This document shows positions 43,817 to 46,905 of a stretch of DNA of 64,000 nt, piece by piece. The stretch is taken from positions 62,001-126,000 of the IMG/VR virus record IMGVR_UViG_3300018962_000001; one strand, 5' to 3'. How positions within the stretch are numbered: position 1 is the stretch's first letter; every line of letters starts with the position of its first letter. Made by a program: the position numbers and the translations under genes. The notes under the pieces were generated by a model. It was not told where the DNA came from, did no database searches, and saw only the letters and a list, made by a program, of their open reading frames with translations.

Positions 43817-43944
43817 GGAGGCGTGCTACCTGGAGAGCATACACATAGCTCATTTGGTAGAGCATCAGTATTGAGAACTGAGGGTTTCGGGTTCGAGTCC
43901 CGATGTGGCCGCAAGGTCATTGCTCTCCGAACTTGCACGCCTCC
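43817..43944 (+). ncRNA. handle RNA 1: permuted tRNA-like (TGA anticodon), break in acceptor 5' strand
   Basis: GGAGGCGTGC/GCACGCCTCC and GGAGAGCA/TGCTCTCC flanks; nt 1-5 (GGTCA) lie after TGTGGCC-GCAA. Confidence 0.75.
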
Positions 43945-43959
43945 TTTAAAACGCTAGGT

Positions 43960-44042
43960 GGGGCGTACTCCCATCAGATGGGCATACACACAGGTTGATC
44001 ACCTGCACACCTAGATCATTGCCCATTGGACTTGTACGCCTC
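43960..44042 (+). ncRNA. handle RNA 2: non-tRNA hairpin cargo
   Basis: GGGGCGTAC/GTACGCCTC, GATGGGCA-TACA...TGCCCATT-GGACTT. Confidence 0.7.
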
Positions 44043-44066
44043 GTATATACTGGACGAGCGACGTAG

Positions 44067-44200
44067 GCGTCGCGCACCCTGACGGTTACTGCATACATTC
44101 ACGACTTTAACTCGTGTTCTAGGTTCGACTCCTAGCCCCTCCGCCTATGGAGGGGTTCCCAGTGGCGGGAGCTTTTGCAGTGAAAACTTGTGCGCGGCGC
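44067..44200 (+). ncRNA. handle RNA 3: permuted tRNA-like with TTA (ochre) anticodon
   Basis: AC arm CACGA-CTTTAAC-TCGTG, T arm, CCCCTCC-GCCTAT-GGAGGGG, then D arm; 11-bp outer stem. Confidence 0.75.
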
Positions 44201-44267
44201 TTTCCTTATTTAACGAGCGTGGACAGGCACGACCAGAAAATTGCCTGGAAATTGCCCAAAAAGGTAC

Positions 44268-44296
44268 TTGACACGCGCAGCGACATGCGCTATGAT
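44268..44296 (+). promoter_or_regulatory. sigma70-type promoter
   Basis: TTGACA-N17-TATGAT. Confidence 0.85.
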
Positions 44297-44302
44297 ACCT
44301 GA

Positions 44303-44795
44303 CATAGCACGAAGCGCGGGGCCGAAAGACATACGGCTCCATCCAGGGCGGGATACTCCCGCAGGTACGCATCAGCGCGGCAGCCTGGAGTGCCGAGTCA
44401 GATCGGCGGCGCAGGGACGGCCATCCCGCGATTGGGGCGGTACACGGCCACGTACCTTACCAACTGCATACAGACGATTCATTGTGGGGGTCGCGGAGGC
44501 ACTCGGCAACTAGGCCGCACCGCTACGCCGCACCCCCCACGAGTGGAATCGCCACTCGTGTCTGTCCTGATCAAGCTGTGGACTCATGTTAGCGGTAGCG
44601 TGAGCCTCGCAGCGCCGGGGTTTGTGATTAATTTGACCGGCCTGATCAGGGCAGACACGAGTGGCGAATCACCATCGGCTATGTTGGGCATAGGTCGGTC
44701 ATCAGTGACGACCGCCGACTCAGGGCACGATCTCCGATTCAGCGATTAGAGATCCTGAGCGGGACAACGGACGGCTGGCCCGAAACCATGCGCGC
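44303..44795 (+). ncRNA. candidate ~490-nt structured ncRNA
   Basis: own promoter, no credible ORF, many stems including a ~24-bp helix 44548-44571/44643-44666. Confidence 0.55.
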
Positions 44796-44803
44796 ATAGA
44801 TCG

Positions 44804-45028
44804 ATGGAATACAAGACACAAGGAGGAGGATATGTAACCGGAATGAATCGTGAGGTTATTCTGATGCTGCATACCCTGGGGCGGGCGATCTCGATGGCTC
44901 AGTTGCGCCCGCCCCAACGTTGCATCATTCCCAGGACGTGGCAGATTTTGATCGCCGGGCTGTTGCTGGTGCATTTGTGTATCGCGTTGGCCTATGGCTT
45001 TCGGATCTTAGTGTGGATGCAGGCGTGA
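44804..45028 (+). CDS. small putative membrane protein
   Basis: hydrophobic C-terminus. Confidence 0.4.
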   Translation: MEYKTQGGGYVTGMNREVILMLHTLGRAISMAQLRPPQRCIIPRTWQILIAGLLLVHLCIALAYGFRILVWMQA

Positions 45029-45103
45029 GGGTGCGAGGCCGAATGGCGAGGCGACAGTCTCCAAAACTGTTCGTTGGAGGTTCGAGTCCTCCCGCATCTG
45101 CCA
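45029..45103 (+). tRNA. tRNA-Trp(CCA)
   Basis: cloverleaf, loop CT-CCA-AA, CCA end; A8. Confidence 0.9.
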
Positions 45104-45256
45104 ATACTTCTTAATGCAGACCCCGGACGGCGATCGGGTAGGTAGGCCGGGCTGCCACGCGGCGGAAGTCGCGCGAGATACCGATCGCCACACGCAGCAC
45201 GATTGCCCTCCTGCGGTGGATGCTTCGCACGCCAGCACTGGCATCCACCCATCTAT

Positions 45257-45340
45257 CGGATCGTGGCGAAATTGGCAAACGCGGCAGATTCAAAACCTGC
45301 TGGTTTATCCTTGGGAGTTCAAGTCTCCCCGATCCGACCA
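45257..45340 (+). tRNA. tRNA-Leu(CAA)
   Basis: cloverleaf, long variable loop, ACCA. Confidence 0.9.
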
Positions 45341-45504
45341 TATCGCGTAACCTACTGGATCGATCAGCTTGCTTCATTCTCTTCCATCGATCCTAGTCCC
45401 GGCAACGGGGCGAACGGCGGAGGCACGGCAGCCCTGGGTATCCAGGCTGCGCGGAACGTTCGAGACGTTCGCGCGATACCACTCCCGTACGCGGGAGCTT
45501 CTGT

Positions 45505-45643
45505 CTAGGGTGGCGCACTCTTACACGTCGAGCGTACATGCTTACTGCCAAATGGTTCAGGCAGGACACTTCTAATGTCCCACATGCGGGTTCGAGTCCC
45601 GCTAAGCGATCCTTTCGCTCGATAGCCTCGTGCGCTGCCCTAG
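45505..45643 (+). ncRNA. handle RNA 4: tRNA-Arg(TCT)-like cargo
   Basis: 14-bp outer stem, TCGAGCG-TACA...CGCTCGA; GGACA-CTTCTAA-TGTCC. Confidence 0.75.
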
Positions 45644-45654
45644 CAAAGATTTTC

Positions 45655-45731
45655 GCCCACGTAGCCCAACTGGCAGAGGCGCGACACTTAGGATGTCGTG
45701 GTTGGGGGTTCGACTCCCTCCGTGGGTACCA
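45655..45731 (+). tRNA. tRNA-Leu(TAG), short variable loop
   Basis: CGACA-CTTAGGA-TGTCG, ACCA. Confidence 0.9.
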
Positions 45732-45734
45732 TGA

Positions 45735-45865
45735 GGACGGCGCGTCCTTACGCAAACGGCTTACATGCTTACTGATCGGTTGGCCGATCAGTTCCACTCC
45801 AAGGAACCAGTGCGGGTTCGAGTCCCGCTAAGCACATCGACGCCGTTTCATCTTACGCGCCGTTC
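45735..45865 (+). ncRNA. handle RNA 5: tRNA-like cargo, loop ACTCCAA (Gly TCC or shifted Trp CCA)
   Basis: 11-bp outer stem, AAACGGC/GCCGTTT, TACA; shares GCTTA/TAAGC and T arm with handle 4. Confidence 0.7.
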
Positions 45866-46010
45866 TCACCTTTCGACCTTGAGGAAGGGGCTTGGCGAAC
45901 ACCACCGCGATTCTGGATGATCCTGGGCTGCTGTGGTGGCAGAGCAGTGCGCTCGCCGGAGTCGTGTCGCTGAGAACCTTCCTCAGTGCCGAAGGGTGCT
46001 GAACCAAAGC

Positions 46011-46116
46011 GATCCCGTAGTCGAACATTGGGCACAGGCAGCCTGGGATACGGGTGCGGGCCTTCGGTCCTTCGGGCCGTGGGTGCCGCGTGCGGGTTCG
46101 AGTCCCGCCGGGATCG
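46011..46116 (+). ncRNA. tRNA-like RNA with expanded core, anticodon undetermined
   Basis: GATCCCG/CGGGATC acceptor, GCGGG-TTCGAGT-CCCGC T arm, no 7-nt AC loop with U33. Confidence 0.55.
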
Positions 46117-46122
46117 TGATTT

Positions 46123-46197
46123 CTGCGTATAGCGCAGCGGTAGCGCACGTGATTTGGGATCACGAGGTCGGAGGTTCGATCCCTCCTACGCAGACCA
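46123..46197 (+). tRNA. tRNA-Pro(TGG)
   Basis: canonical cloverleaf, ACCA. Confidence 0.95.
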
Positions 46198-46200
46198 GTA

Positions 46201-46295
46201 CTCGGTGTTCTCTCATCAGGTGAGCATACATGGATTTGCAGGTTCGACTCCTGCCGGGCCTTCGGGTCCGGTGCTCACAAAACTTGGACACCGGG
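46201..46295 (+). ncRNA. handle RNA 6: T-arm plus UUCG-capped acceptor minihelix
   Basis: CTCGGTGTTC/GGACACCGGG, GTGAGCA-TACA...TGCTCAC-AAAACTT. Confidence 0.75.
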
Positions 46296-46304
46296 GCCAC
46301 CATC

Positions 46305-46593
46305 GGATGTGACGCGCTCCCATCTGTGGAGCATACATACAATGCTTTTGGAGCAGCAGGTCGGCGGTTCGACTCCGCCTCCCCCCACCATCCCGCATTG
46401 TGCGGGGTCCGGCACGCTGCACGGCGCAGAACAACGGACGGGGTGTTTTTCTGGTGTCCGGGGCGTCGTGGGCGGGTACTCCTCCAGAAATGAGAGCCTG
46501 GAGGGATGGTCGCCCACGACGCAACGGGGGGGGTATAGCTCAGGTGGCAGAGCGGCTCGTGATGAAGCTCGGCATGACTCGCGCGTCACGTTC
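46305..46593 (+). ncRNA. handle RNA 7: permuted tRNA-Gln(TTG); 3' half 46344-46390, 5' half 46529-46557
   Basis: 13-bp outer stem; halves join to a 76-nt cloverleaf with GCTGC/GCAGC AC stem. Confidence 0.75.
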
Positions 46594-46603
46594 GTTTCAC
46601 TCG

Positions 46604-46680
46604 CGGGGTATAGCGCAGCCTGGCAGCGCGCGTGGCTGGGGGCCACGAGGTCGTAGGTTCGAGTCCTACTACTCCGACCA
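46604..46680 (+). tRNA. tRNA-Pro(GGG)
   Basis: canonical cloverleaf, ACCA. Confidence 0.95.
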
Positions 46681-46681
46681 T

Positions 46682-46905
46682 GATCGCCGCATCCTTATCC
46701 GGTGAGCGTACATGCTTTCGGTTGAAACCCGAGAGGTCCCTGGTTCGATCCCAGGTCTCCCCACCAGTCCCGTAGGCGCGGGAGCCGTCGCAAGCGGCTA
46801 ACTCGTGAGTATCCGGGTGGCGGACTCGCTTCGCCACGCGGGGGGAGATAGCTCAGTTGGTAGAGCGCTTATGTTTGTTCCGCTCGACGACCTTGTGCGG
46901 CGATC
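46682..46905 (+). ncRNA. handle RNA 8: permuted tRNA-Phe(GAA); 3' half 46719-46766, 5' half 46842-46869
   Basis: GATCGCCGCA/TGCGGCGATC outer stem; halves join to a perfect 76-nt cloverleaf. Confidence 0.8.

What the first reader, a model, noticed from the sequence alone, without database searches (positions are those of the whole stretch)
43817..46905. Family of eight 'handle' RNAs clamping circularly permuted tRNA cargo, directly after a Ro60-like operon
Seen: eight elements (43817, 43960, 44067, 45505, 45735, 46201, 46305, 46682) share one architecture with different primary sequences, so the stems covary: a 9-14 bp outer stem, an internal loop (5' about TCYYAYC, 3' about RACYT), an inner stem ending GC(A/G/T), then an invariant TACA, the cargo, and the complementary 3' strand. 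Cargo is a permuted tRNA broken near nt 27-30 (Phe, Gln, TTA), a tRNA broken in the acceptor 5' strand (TGA, Arg, Gly/Trp-like), a capped minihelix, or a plain hairpin. The first handle starts about at the TSS of the promoter overlapping the E1 stop. Established: bacterial and phage Ro60 genes sit beside Y RNAs, and YrlA is a permuted tRNA mimic on a Ro-binding stem; permuted tRNA genes are known from some algae and an archaeon, where BHB motifs are spliced. Inference: either a new multi-member Y-RNA class presenting different tRNA mimics, or a phage-specific permuted-tRNA system in which the handle is the processing signal.
Basis: partly seen in the sequence, partly recalled or inferred. Interest (0 to 1): 0.95.

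Follow-up and report, generated by a model that had tools for sequence, protein, structure and literature searches.

The report
Phage Y-RNA array displaying tRNA mimics
A jumbo phage carries nine small RNAs that share one conserved two-stem "handle" holding a tRNA look-alike or a hairpin; the handle is a divergent form of the Ro60-binding stem of bacterial YrlA Y RNAs, and it sits beside a previously unrecognised Ro60-like protein in this phage, other huge phages and several bacterial phyla.

Summary
All eight elements have the described architecture, and a ninth lies at 47529-47602. A covariance model built mostly from relatives finds seven of the nine (E 3e-15 to 5e-3). The two with very long cargo are found by stem search and a repeat finder.

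The 525-aa upstream protein has no Pfam TROVE hit, but its predicted fold matches Ro60 over its full length (Foldseek E 3e-11). It heads a conserved operon: a 75-aa protein ending in Gly, the Ro60-like protein, a vWA protein, a 289-aa unknown, JAB and E1.

The same handle occurs 177 times in 88 relatives' loci. Of these, 171 are on the gene's strand, and covariation is strong. It shares its architecture and its 3' AAACUU loop with Rfam YrlA. Some bacterial members hit YrlA at 34-48 bits, below the cut-off of 69.

The cargo types are:
- permuted tRNAs (E3, E7, E8; two keep ACCA);
- a capped tRNA nicked at nt 5/6 (E1);
- unpermuted tRNA-likes (E4, E5);
- a minihelix (E6);
- hairpins (E2, E9).

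Best reading: these are divergent YrlA-type Y RNAs that dock on the Ro60-like ring and display tRNA mimics. This is a new variant of a known kind and is not phage-specific. Maturation into working tRNAs is unlikely for most elements but remains open for E7 and E8.

The parts
43817..43944 (+). E1. Handle: outer stem 43817-43826/43935-43944, inner stem 43831-43839/43921-43929, UACA 43840-43843. Cargo 43844-43920 is a class-I tRNA(UGA)-like body. Its acceptor is capped by a GCAA loop and the chain is broken between nt 5 and 6.
   Evidence: 40.3 bits. ARAGORN gives a perfect cloverleaf once GGUCA is moved to the 5' end. Rfam tRNA scores 50.1 bits over model positions 4-67.
43958..44044 (+). E2. 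Handle with a 31-nt cargo (43989-44019) that is a plain 5-bp hairpin. No tRNA features; comparable to YrlB.
   Evidence: 66.1 bits; family D2.
44065..44202 (+). E3. Handle with cargo 44098-44175. The cargo is a circularly permuted, degenerate tRNA(UUA) mimic in the order anticodon arm, T arm, acceptor capped by a 6-nt loop, weak D arm. The break is at about nt 26/27.
   Evidence: 35.9 bits; the rotated sequence is called tRNA-Stop(tta), with a 4-bp T stem and a poor D arm.
45505..45643 (+). E4. Handle with cargo 45539-45615. The cargo is an unpermuted tRNA(UCU)-like body with a 6-bp acceptor and no CCA.
   Evidence: ARAGORN Arg-tct 45538-45612; Rfam tRNA 39.2 bits; 24.7 bits.
45732..45868 (+). 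E5, a paralogue of E4. Handle with a U-C mismatch closing the inner stem; cargo 45766-45840. The cargo is an unpermuted tRNA-like body. Its D arm is replaced by a 7-bp hairpin and its anticodon loop is ACUCCAA, with C at position 33.
   Evidence: ARAGORN Gly-tcc; 20.6 bits, E=0.005; families D4 and D6: same T arm and 5' strand as E4.
46201..46295 (+). E6. Handle with a 41-nt cargo (46231-46271): a T arm plus an acceptor stem capped by UUCG. This is the tRNA 'top half' minihelix.
   Evidence: 47 bits. The Rfam YrlA T arm plus acceptor stem-loop (model positions 31-62) align to it at 17.9 bits.
46302..46596 (+). E7. Handle with a 14-15 bp outer stem and cargo 46338-46566. The cargo is a permuted tRNA(UUG): nt about 29-76 ending ACCA, then a structured insert of about 135 nt, then nt 1-28.
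   Evidence: rotated sequence gives a clean cloverleaf with ACCA; family D2. The model misses it because the cargo is too long.
46682..46905 (+). E8. Handle with cargo 46713-46880. The cargo is a permuted tRNA-Phe(GAA): nt 27-76 ending ACCA, then an insert of about 75 nt, then nt 1-26.
   Evidence: rotated sequence gives a textbook tRNA-Phe with a 7-bp Watson-Crick acceptor and ACCA; families D2 and D6.
47529..47602 (+). It has a 12-bp outer stem, the 5' loop CCUUAUCAU, UACA at 47557-47560 and 16 nt of cargo. It ends 18 nt before the ATG at 47620, and an AGGAG lies between them.
   Evidence: 47.3 bits, E=3e-10; family D2.
43786..43813 (+). Sigma-70-type promoter TTGACA-16-TATACT with an extended -10 TG. 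Its -35 hexamer overlaps the stop codon of the E1 gene. The expected transcription start is at the base of E1's outer stem.
   Evidence: 11 of 12 matches.
39512..41089 (+). Ro60-like protein (525 aa): a helical ring domain plus a vWA domain with a DxSxS motif. It is the presumed binding partner of the handles.
   Evidence: No Pfam, NCBIfam or PHROG hit. The family profile hits human Ro60 at E=8.8e-4. The AF2 model (pLDDT 84) matches Ro60 structures 1yvp, 2nvo, 9nen and 9kop over about 500 columns, with E 3e-11 to 1e-9 and TM about 0.6.
39285..39512 (+). p75, a 75-aa protein with an invariant C-terminal ...RPEAVFG followed by stop. It is a candidate ubiquitin-like modifier for the E1.
   Evidence: Alignment A4. 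Present in 58 of 92 loci, upstream of the Ro60-like gene.
41086..41841 (+). vWA protein with a C-terminal helix-turn-helix.
   Evidence: A vWA gene follows the Ro60-like gene in relatives.
41845..42714 (+). p289, a conserved operon protein of unknown function. It is beta-rich, with only weak OB/HIN/RecO-like structural matches.
   Evidence: Present in 61 of 92 loci. AF2 pLDDT is 85. No Foldseek hit below E=1e-3.
42644..43108 (+). JAB/JAMM-family isopeptidase-like protein.
   Evidence: Pfam Prok-JAB E=1.1e-7. PADLOC JAB models.
43130..43789 (+). ThiF/E1-like adenylyltransferase.
   Evidence: Pfam ThiF E=6.6e-24. PADLOC E1-E2 (Cap2-like) models E=1e-15. Present in 60 of 92 loci.
38507..39166 (+). 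RNA ligase (adenylyltransferase domain only), two genes upstream of the Ro60-like gene. It is present in this phage but absent from the bacterial operons.
   Evidence: Pfam RNA_ligase E=1.4e-25. phrog_24030 E=1.7e-63. tblastn hits in 0 of 92 loci.

Best explanation
The nine elements are small non-coding RNAs of the Y-RNA type. They form a divergent branch of the bacterial and phage YrlA family.

Shown here:
- Each RNA closes its 5' and 3' ends into a two-stem handle: outer stem, asymmetric internal loop, inner stem, invariant UACA.
- This handle is conserved in structure, with covarying sequence, next to one protein family that has the Ro60 fold.
- Its layout and its 3' AAACUU loop match the Ro60-binding module of YrlA.

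Inferred:
- The handle docks on the Ro60-like ring.
- The variable cargo is an effector module. It may be a complete tRNA mimic in one of several topologies, a tRNA top-half, or a hairpin. It brings tRNA-recognising partners to the ring, or gates the ring, as Y RNAs do for Ro60 and PNPase.
- Most cargos cannot decode. Their acceptor ends are capped, they lack CCA, and they carry Ser/Leu-type anticodons on class-I bodies. They therefore act as mimics.
- In this phage the array lies between an RNA ligase plus Ro60-like operon and a block of about 30 ordinary tRNA genes. Its most likely job is tRNA surveillance, repair or decoy function during infection. It could titrate or flag host enzymes that cut or bind tRNA, or serve as a cofactor for the ligase.
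- E7 and E8 keep ACCA and a G+1 behind a structured leader. RNase P and 3' trimming probably open them into two-piece, CCA-ended tRNA look-alikes that stay held by the handle, as shown experimentally for M. smegmatis YrlA.
For: - **Handle is real and conserved.** Model R1 gives 177 hits at E<=1e-3 in 1.33 Mb around homologues of the protein. Of these, 171 are on the gene's strand and the other 6 form one array in L017.
- **Covariation.** 18 of 19 pairs show compensatory changes. Double-change cells number 740 against 261+-27 in shuffles. The covariation score is 0.586 against 0.204 shuffled and 0.11-0.18 in slid registers.
- **Loop motifs were not imposed.** They emerged in the first scan without being required.
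- **Partner has the Ro60 fold**.
- **Handles sit inside or beside the operon**.
- **Homology to YrlA.** Sub-threshold but significant RF02553 hits lie inside handle elements: 48.4, 46.1, 39.5, 38.4, 36.8, 36.0 and 34.1 bits, with E down to 9e-8. The alignment shows the same layout of outer stem, loop, 7-bp stem, CUA, tRNA-like module, and a shared 3' loop AaAcUuG.
- **Literature on YrlA.** It is encoded beside Ro60 on the same strand and has a conserved YUAY and a T-AS-D tRNA-like domain. M. smegmatis YrlA is cut by RNase P and receives CCA (PMC4201824; bioRxiv 10.1101/312249). Phage Ro60 binds phage Y-like RNAs (PMC12135203).
- **Mimic character.** Acceptors are capped. CCA is present in only 8 of 111 cargos. 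A34 and 6- or 8-nt loops occur in relatives. U33 is kept in 42 of 61 and R37 in 48 of 61. The cargos are not copies of the phage's ordinary tRNAs.
Against: - There are no binding or expression data.
- The partner is called Ro60-like from fold and a weak profile hit only. Pfam TROVE is negative even for distant family members.
- The YrlA hallmark GNCGAAN0-1G is absent. The window's elements reach at most 19 bits on RF02553, against a gathering score of 69.
- E7 and E8 un-permute into textbook tRNAs with ACCA. Some relatives clamp complete unpermuted tRNAs with ACCA, for example L088 9399-9530. A precursor role therefore cannot be excluded for those.
- E9 lies in a 5' leader 18 nt before an ORF, which hints at a cis-regulatory use of the handle.
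- The downstream function (decoy, repair cofactor or tether) is inference from context.
Confidence: 0.7

Rival explanations
1. The elements are precursors of working tRNAs. The handle would be a processing or chaperone signal. The permuted genes (E3, E7, E8) would be cut at the handle and ligated, for example by the neighbouring RNA ligase. RNase P and 3' trimming would open the acceptor, as in the permuted tRNA genes of Cyanidioschyzon. The unpermuted cargos (E4, E5) would simply be released.
For: - E8 and E7 un-permute into canonical cloverleaves with A73-CCA.
- An RNA ligase gene lies two genes upstream of the Ro60-like gene.
- Relatives clamp high-scoring unpermuted tRNAs, some with ACCA.
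- U33 and R37 are enriched in cargo anticodon loops.
Against: - The junctions lie at helix junctions (nt 26/27, 28/29, 5/6), not in loops, and the handle has no bulge-helix-bulge motif.
- E1, E3 and E6 are capped by 4-6 nt loops without CCA. E2 and E9 have no tRNA at all. E3 and E5 are degenerate.
- Across the family only 8 of 111 cargos have CCA. Many anticodon loops are non-canonical, or carry Ser/Leu anticodons on class-I bodies.
- The ligase is absent from all 92 related loci.
- The window already has ordinary tRNA-Phe(GAA), Gln(UUG), Arg(UCU) and Gly(UCC) genes.
Confidence: 0.15
2. The handles are generic double-strand processing stems, such as RNase III sites like those flanking rRNAs. 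They would punctuate a long tRNA/ncRNA transcript and have no dedicated protein partner.
For: - Long leader-trailer duplexes of about 20 bp flank tRNA-sized units within a tRNA-rich transcription unit.
- Only two strong promoters are seen for many units.
Against: - Invariant unpaired nucleotides (loop A, ACU, UACA) and fixed loop sizes are conserved across phyla while the stems covary.
- Co-occurrence and strand linkage with one protein family is strict.
- The ordinary tRNAs of the same array lack handles.
- The handle is homologous to the YrlA Ro60-binding module.
Confidence: 0.07
3. The handle is a cis-acting regulatory or structural element. It could be a protein-binding operator in leaders, as suggested by E9 lying before an ORF, or a stabilising clamp that protects cargo RNAs from exonucleases, rather than a Y-RNA scaffold.
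For: - E9 ends 18 nt upstream of an ATG with a Shine-Dalgarno sequence.
- In relatives, handles occur inside operons: between p75 and the Ro60-like gene, and between that gene and p289.
Against: - Eight of the nine window copies are not next to ORF starts.
- The cargos are tRNA-shaped modules, as in YrlA.
- The intergenic positions are equally expected for small-RNA genes co-transcribed with the operon, as yrlA and yrlB are in Salmonella (PMC4201824).
Confidence: 0.08

Closest known systems
YrlA / YrlB bacterial and phage Y RNAs (Rfam RF02553; Chen et al. 2014, PMC4201824; Wang et al. 2018, bioRxiv 10.1101/312249)
   Same: - They are encoded beside a Ro60-fold protein, usually on the same strand, often in several copies per locus.
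- The 5' and 3' ends pair into an outer stem, an asymmetric internal loop and a second stem. A conserved UA-containing tetranucleotide (YUAY there, UACA here) follows, then a tRNA-like module with T arm, capped acceptor and D arm.
- The 3' loop AAACUU is shared.
- Short members without a tRNA module (E2, E9) parallel YrlB.
- ACCA-bearing members parallel M. smegmatis YrlA, which RNase P opens.
- Occasional linkage to RNA ligases is also seen in both.
   Different: - The 5' recognition motif GNCGAAN0-1G is replaced by CGYAC|CCNAC in bacteria and UCYYAYC/CCUUAUC in this phage.
- All members are below the Rfam gathering score.
- About half of the tRNA-like cargos add a complete anticodon arm. The handle therefore leaves the body at nt 26/27 or 43/44, inside the acceptor strand at 5/6, or below an unpermuted acceptor, instead of replacing the anticodon stem.
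- Arrays reach 8-10 copies.
- The partner protein is a separate clade invisible to Pfam TROVE, and it sits in an operon with a Gly-terminated 75-aa protein, JAB and E1.
Circularly permuted tRNA genes of Cyanidioschyzon merolae, other algae and an archaeon (Soma et al. 2007; cited in bioRxiv 10.1101/312249)
   Same: In E3, E7 and E8 the 3' half lies upstream of the 5' half in one unit. The termini pair into a stem. In E7 and E8 an intervening sequence separates CCA from G+1.
   Different: There is no bulge-helix-bulge motif. The junctions are at helix junctions rather than in loops. No splicing endonuclease is known in bacteria or seen here. Most family members are capped and lack CCA. The handle is conserved as a protein-linked motif even when the cargo is not a tRNA.
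b7a-tRNA (band-7-associated tRNA-like RNA next to RtcB; Burroughs & Aravind 2016, as summarised in bioRxiv 10.1101/312249)
   Same: It is a near-authentic tRNA-shaped non-coding RNA encoded inside an RNA-repair-type operon, and was proposed to be functionally interchangeable with YrlA.
   Different: No Band-7 or RtcB gene was seen among the window ORFs scanned (36-44 kb). No handle has been described for b7a-tRNA.
Ro60 / TROVE proteins (Xenopus 1yvp, D. radiodurans Rsr 2nvo, Thermus phage phiLo 9kop/9l5y; PMC12135203)
   Same: The fold matches over the full length: a helical ring plus a vWA domain with a DxSxS motif. A phage-encoded precedent exists in which the protein binds phage Y-like RNAs.
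   Different: Sequence identity is 12-16%. There is no Pfam TROVE hit in any member tested. The operon context is distinct: a Ubl-like protein, JAB and E1 rather than RtcB/RtcA.

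Membership tests
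YrlA-type Y RNA (Rfam RF02553) | Reaches the Rfam gathering score (69 bits) | tested here: not met
   The best window scores are 18-19 bits. Bacterial relatives reach 34-48 bits with E down to 9e-8, still below the cut-off.
YrlA-type Y RNA (Rfam RF02553) | Encoded within a few kb of a Ro60 homologue, usually on the same strand | tested here: met
   The window array starts 28 nt after the operon's last stop codon. In relatives, 171 of 177 model hits are on the gene's strand and lie inside or beside the operon. The protein's Ro60 fold is supported.
YrlA-type Y RNA (Rfam RF02553) | The 5' and 3' ends form a stem, internal loop and stem module, followed by a conserved YUAY | tested here: met
   Shown. 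UACA is invariant in all nine window copies and in at least 99% of 150 relatives. The layout and 3' loop AAACUU coincide with the YrlA consensus.
YrlA-type Y RNA (Rfam RF02553) | GNCGAAN0-1G motif on the 5' strand | tested here: not met
   The corresponding position reads CGYAC|CCNAC in relatives and GC|UACC or YAC|UCYYAYC in the window.
YrlA-type Y RNA (Rfam RF02553) | tRNA-like effector module (T arm, closed acceptor stem-loop, D arm) | tested here: met
   Present in E1 and E3-E8. Absent in E2 and E9, as in YrlB. The T-loop motif occurs in 114 of 181 family cargos.
YrlA-type Y RNA (Rfam RF02553) | Bound by the Ro60 protein | not testable with these tools
   Needs EMSA, RIP or a structure.
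Permuted tRNA genes (Cyanidioschyzon type) | 3' half precedes 5' half, and un-permuting gives a canonical tRNA | tested here: met
   E8 and E7 give clean cloverleaves with ACCA. E3 gives only a degenerate one.
Permuted tRNA genes (Cyanidioschyzon type) | Bulge-helix-bulge motif at the paired termini, cut by a splicing endonuclease | tested here: not met
   The termini form a 10-15 bp stem, a 4-10 / 5-8 nt asymmetric loop and a 6-9 bp stem. There is no 3-4-3 BHB. No endonuclease was identified among the ORFs scanned.
Permuted tRNA genes (Cyanidioschyzon type) | A circular intermediate and a mature, ligated tRNA are produced | not testable with these tools
   Needs RT-PCR across the junction or RNA-seq.
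Ro60 / TROVE protein | Pfam TROVE (PF05731) domain | tested here: not met
   No hit even at E<=10. Only vWA_Ro60 appears, at E=0.18. Ten distant family members are also negative.
Ro60 / TROVE protein | Ring of helical repeats plus a C-terminal vWA domain with a MIDAS motif | tested here: met
   The AF2 model matches 13 Ro60/TROVE chains over 468-545 columns, with E 3e-11 to 3e-7 and TM 0.55-0.63. D342-x-S344-x-S346 is invariant. The family profile hits human Ro60 at E=8.8e-4.
Prokaryotic ubiquitin-like conjugation operon (E1 / JAB / Ubl) | E1-like adenylyltransferase, JAB peptidase and a small protein ending in Gly in one operon | tested here: met
Prokaryotic ubiquitin-like conjugation operon (E1 / JAB / Ubl) | Beta-grasp fold of the small protein, and an E2-like partner | not tested
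p289 gave no E2-like match.

The most novel reading that the evidence does not exclude
The handle RNAs and the Ro60-like ring could be the RNA arm of a previously undescribed, widely distributed system that couples tRNA-shaped baits to a ubiquitin-like pathway. That pathway would consist of the 75-aa Gly-terminated protein, E1 and JAB. The tRNA mimics would capture tRNA-binding or tRNA-cutting proteins, or damaged tRNAs. The Ubl machinery would then tag the captured protein or the ring itself, or deliver sulfur as in the Urm1/TtuB-type tRNA thiolation pathways. In the phage, E7 and E8 would be opened by RNase P into two-piece, CCA-ended tRNAs that remain tethered to the ring and may be charged.
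Probability: 0.15. Interest if true: 0.9.

Novelty: new variant of a known kind. Interest (0 to 1): 0.66.

Why it matters
- **A hidden Ro60 clade.** The family has 909 clusters at 50% identity and Pfam does not detect it. It occurs in Planctomycetota, Chloroflexota, Abditibacteriota, Desulfobacterota and several jumbo phages. It has its own Y-RNA class, often in arrays of up to ten.
- **A clue to Y-RNA function.** What the tRNA-like domain of bacterial Y RNAs is for remains an open question. This family shows the module can be a whole tRNA mimic with an anticodon arm, attached to the handle in at least four topologies. That points to partners which read tRNA shape, and perhaps the anticodon loop.
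- **New hypotheses.** The constant linkage to an E1/JAB/Gly-terminated small protein, and the phage's added RNA ligase and tRNA array, give concrete testable ideas about tRNA surveillance in phage-host conflict.
- **Annotation.** ARAGORN calls three of these elements as ordinary tRNA genes (Ser-UGA, Arg-UCU, Gly-UCC), and Rfam calls two of the three (not Gly-UCC). This inflates and distorts the phage's apparent tRNA repertoire.

Tried and rejected
- **GenBank phages.** blastn of 43700-47000 against GenBank phages gave only generic tRNA matches and no relatives.
- **Rfam.** At gathering scores, Rfam returned nothing but tRNA, both on the window and on 8 related loci.
- **Sequence-level annotation of the 525-aa protein.** Pfam, NCBIfam, PHROGs and a single-sequence PDB search all returned nothing. 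Only the family profile and the predicted fold identified it.
- **RNAalifold on the MAFFT alignment.** It recovered only the inner stem, because variable loop lengths put the outer strands out of register. This was fixed by supplying the structure and re-aligning with the model.
- **Relaxed stem scanner.** It produced many false positives: 78 in shuffled sequence. It was therefore used only with motif filters and alongside the covariance model.
- **E7 and E8.** The covariance model cannot reach them because their cargo is 168-229 nt.
- **GCATACA at 44466.** It looked like a tenth handle but has no 3' partner within 3 kb.
- **DNA repeat or mobile element.** Rejected. Only the 22-nt loop, inner stem and UACA segment is alike (68-82%), while the outer stems are unrelated in sequence.
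- **Recent copies of the phage's own tRNAs.** Rejected: local alignment scores are 17-32 out of about 75.
- **p289.** Its predicted structure gave no significant PDB match. Profiles of p75 and p289 found nothing in the PDB.
- **Burroughs & Aravind 2016.** The paper could not be retrieved. Whether it already noted this operon is therefore unknown.
- **Closest homologue contigs.** Two of them had no DNA available.

Full report
**Setting.** The window has 60% G+C and is phage-like. ARAGORN finds 36 tRNA genes, all on the + strand between 37.6 and 60.4 kb. The window matches a 205-kb IMG/VR contig, and the same protein also sits on a 225-kb contig. No GenBank phage resembles the region beyond ordinary tRNAs.

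- Reading 43500-47200 and a purely mechanical search for "TACA preceded by a stem, nested in a second stem" recover E1, E2, E3, E4, E6 and E8. Their outer stems are 10-14 bp and their inner stems 6-9 bp.
- E5 and E7 differ only by one mismatch in the inner stem.
- Background hits of that search have 7-9 bp and 6-7 bp stems and none of the loop motifs.
- MFE folds keep the handle in all eight and show tRNA arms inside the cargo.
- A repeat finder independently groups the 22-nt "5' loop + inner stem + TACA" segments of E2, E4, E6, E7 and E8 with a further copy at 47540 (family D2).
- That further copy is a ninth complete handle, E9, at 47529-47602. It has only 16 nt of cargo and ends 18 nt before an ATG that has a Shine-Dalgarno sequence.
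- A tenth GCATACA at 44466 has a handle-like 5' strand but no 3' partner.
Its -35 hexamer contains the stop codon of the upstream E1 gene.

**The upstream gene is a Ro60 homologue that sequence libraries miss.**
- The 525-aa ORF at 39512-41089 has no hit in Pfam, NCBIfam, PHROGs or PADLOC.
- It has hundreds of homologues at 45-59% identity in Chloroflexota, Planctomycetota, Abditibacteriota, Desulfobacterota and others. They fall into 909 clusters at 50% identity.
- A profile of 26 members hits human Ro60 at E=8.8e-4 and two TROVE proteins at E=0.016.
- The AlphaFold model (pLDDT 84, pTM 0.80) matches thirteen Ro60/TROVE chains over essentially the full length. These include Xenopus 1yvp, human 9nen, D. 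radiodurans 2nvo and Thermus phage phiLo 9kop/9l5y. E-values are 3e-11 to 3e-7 and TM is about 0.6. The next hits are isolated vWA domains.
- A DxSxS motif is invariant.
- Even the most distant family members stay negative for Pfam TROVE.

**The operon is conserved.**
- tblastn of the window's proteins against 92 related loci finds the 75-aa protein in 58, the 289-aa protein in 61, the JAB protein in 35, the E1 in 60 and the vWA protein in 15. All hits are on the same strand and in the same order. The RNA ligase is found in none (gene tables).
- The 75-aa protein ends in an invariant RPEAVFG-stop. With the E1 and JAB genes, this makes it a candidate ubiquitin-like modifier.
- The 289-aa protein models confidently but has no significant structural neighbour.
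- The closest homologues of the Ro60-like protein (59% identity) lie in cellular contigs, so the phage probably acquired the module from bacteria.

**The handle is a conserved RNA family tied to that protein.**
- The same mechanical stem search on the related loci returned dozens of + strand elements. Their 5' loops read CCNAC and their 3' loops RAACUU, and neither motif had been required.
- I aligned 24 short-cargo members, supplied the two-helix structure and built covariance model R1.
- In the window, R1 finds E2, E9, E6, E1, E3, E4 and E5 and nothing else above 12 bits.
- In 1.33 Mb of related loci it finds 177 matches at E<=1e-3. Of these, 171 are on the strand of the Ro60-like gene. The other six form one array in a Ktedonobacterales locus, where the array is inverted.
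- On the model-made alignment of 149 distinct sequences, 80.8% of cells pair against 59.7% in shuffles. Eighteen of 19 pairs show double changes. Cells with compensatory changes number 740 against 261+-27. The covariation score is 0.586 against 0.204, and against 0.11-0.18 for slid registers. This alignment is fitted to the model and so leans towards the structure, but the independent MAFFT alignment gave the same direction.
- The nearly invariant unpaired positions are the loop A, UACA (usually followed by AAC) and the ACU of the 3' loop.
- Handles sit upstream of or between the p75 and Ro60-like genes, between the Ro60-like gene and p289, or just after E1, with one to eight per locus.
- Other huge viral contigs (L084, L087, L088, L089) carry arrays interleaved with ordinary tRNA genes, as the window does.

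**Relation to YrlA.**
- At gathering thresholds, Rfam finds only tRNAs in the window and in eight related loci.
- At E-value thresholds, the YrlA model RF02553 hits inside handle elements of bacterial relatives at 48.4, 46.1, 39.5, 38.4, 36.8, 36.0 and 34.1 bits, with E down to 9e-8. The gathering score is 69.
- The printed alignment shows the YrlA consensus in this order: outer stem, 5' loop, 7-bp stem, CUA, variable region, T arm, closed acceptor stem-loop, D arm, 7-bp stem, 3' loop AaAcUuG, outer stem. This is the handle's layout, and the 3' loop is the handle's RAACUU.
- The YrlA hallmark GNCGAAN0-1G (PMC4201824) lies where the handle has CGYAC|CCNAC. The protein-contact strand has therefore changed, in step with a very divergent protein.
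- The conserved UA that kinks YrlA (bioRxiv 10.1101/312249) corresponds in position to UACA.
- I therefore read the handle as a divergent Ro60-binding module and the family as a distant branch of YrlA. It fails two formal YrlA criteria: the Rfam score and the GNCGAA motif.

**The cargo.**
- Moving the 3'-proximal piece to the front in silico turns E8 into a textbook tRNA-Phe(GAA) with a 7-bp Watson-Crick acceptor and ACCA.
- The same operation turns E7 into a tRNA(UUG) with ACCA, E1 into a class-I tRNA(UGA) with a 7-bp acceptor and no CCA, and E3 into a degenerate tRNA(UUA).
- The chain breaks are at nt 26/27 (E8, E3), about 28/29 (E7) and 5/6 (E1). The natural ends are joined by a GCAA loop (E1), a 6-nt loop (E3), or structured inserts of about 135 nt (E7) and about 75 nt (E8).
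- E4 and E5 are unpermuted tRNA-like bodies with 6-bp acceptors standing on the handle. In E5 the D arm is replaced by a hairpin and position 33 is C.
- E6 is a T arm plus a UUCG-capped acceptor, and it aligns to the T arm and acceptor stem-loop of YrlA.
- E2 and E9 are hairpins.
- None of the cargos is a close copy of the phage's ordinary tRNAs.
- In the wider family, 114 of 181 distinct cargos have a T-loop motif. Of those, 61 also carry an anticodon-like arm, placed either before the T arm or after the D arm. The latter puts the handle at the variable-loop position, nt 43/44.
- U33 is kept in 42 of 61 and R37 in 48 of 61, and the anticodons are all different. A34, 6- or 8-nt loops, and Ser/Leu anticodons on class-I bodies are common. 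CCA follows the acceptor in only 8 of 111.
- These are tRNA-derived shapes kept as shapes, not as decoders. A minority, including E7 and E8 and for example L088 9399-9530, remain indistinguishable from real tRNAs.

**Mechanism.**
- Shown: the conserved structure, the linkage to a Ro60-fold protein, the homology of layout with YrlA, and the tRNA-like cargos.
- Inferred from the Ro60/Y-RNA literature (PMC4201824, PMC12135203, bioRxiv 10.1101/312249): the handle binds the ring's outer surface, and the cargo recruits or blocks partners.
- Inferred from context: the phage adds an RNA ligase, places the array at the head of its tRNA block and drives it from a strong promoter. A role in protecting or repairing the tRNA pool, or in decoying host tRNA-directed enzymes, is therefore the most economical reading.
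- E7 and E8 are likely opened by RNase P, as M. smegmatis YrlA is.
- Full maturation into ordinary tRNAs would need cuts and ligation at helix junctions with no known bacterial enzyme. It does not fit the capped, CCA-less majority, so I give it about 15%, and only for a subset.
- A generic RNase III-type processing stem does not explain the invariant loops or the protein linkage.

**Verdict.** The finding is real, and the eight-copy array (nine with E9) is not a chance pattern. It is not a categorically new system. It is a new, large and unannotated variant of the Ro60/Y-RNA theme. Its unusual features are whole-tRNA mimics in several topologies, two CCA-bearing permuted tRNAs, arrays of up to ten, and an E1/JAB/Gly-terminated-protein operon. 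None of these features turned up in the papers I could search. The one paper most likely to overlap could not be retrieved.

Noticed in passing
window 47529-47602: A ninth handle lies outside the reported span. It has 16 nt of cargo and ends 18 nt upstream of an ATG (47620) that has an AGGAG. The handle may therefore also be used in cis in an mRNA leader.
   Followed up: partly
window 39285-39512, with relatives in 58 loci: A 75-aa protein ends in an invariant ...RPEAVFG-stop. It is always upstream of the Ro60-like gene and in an operon with JAB and ThiF/E1 genes. This makes it a candidate ubiquitin-like (or sulfur-carrier) modifier linked to a Ro60 RNP. Its fold was not predicted.
   Followed up: partly
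window 43840-43910, 45538-45612, 45765-45836: ARAGORN calls three handle cargos as ordinary tRNA genes (Ser-UGA, Arg-UCU, Gly-UCC), and Rfam calls the first two. Automatic annotation would therefore over-count this phage's tRNA set.
   Followed up: yes
window 46011-46116: An odd 106-nt tRNA-like RNA without a handle. It has a 9-bp acceptor-type stem, extra hairpins in place of a normal anticodon/variable region, and a T arm nearly identical to that of E4 and E5. Rfam tRNA scores it 26.8 bits, just below the cut-off.
   Followed up: partly
window 44268-44296 and 44541-44674: A second near-consensus promoter (TTGACA-17-TATGAT) is followed about 250 nt later by a hairpin spanning about 134 nt with a near-perfect stem of about 30 bp (-84.6 kcal/mol for 44535-44680). 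Its function is unknown.
   Followed up: no
window 44098-44175 (E3); L070 9516-9677: The cargo's anticodon loop reads CUUUAAC (anticodon UUA, complementary to the UAA stop codon). For one planctomycete relative ARAGORN also reported a UUA anticodon, but from a junction-derived arm, so that call is unreliable. With capped acceptors these cannot act as suppressors as they stand.
   Followed up: partly
window 38507-39166 and 37968-38510: An RNA ligase with the adenylyltransferase domain only (219 aa) is preceded by an overlapping 180-aa ORF with no hits. Both are absent from all related bacterial loci, so they are a phage-specific addition next to the Ro60-like operon.
   Followed up: partly
window 44832-45028: A minimal ORF (ATG-TAA) lies directly after a strong AAGGAGGAGG. 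A small ORF that looks hydrophobic (about 60 aa) follows and ends at the start of tRNA-Trp. This is possibly a translationally coupled small membrane protein inside the RNA array.
   Followed up: no
L017 6449-8648 and L090 11546-11874: In Ktedonobacterales the handle arrays lie on the strand opposite to the operon, convergent with E1. In all other taxa sampled they are co-oriented with it.
   Followed up: no
window 46391-46525 and 46767-46841: The inserts between ACCA and G+1 of E7 and E8 fold into long hairpins, including a stem of about 20 bp directly before G+1 of E7. They might be processing signals or separate small RNAs.
   Followed up: no
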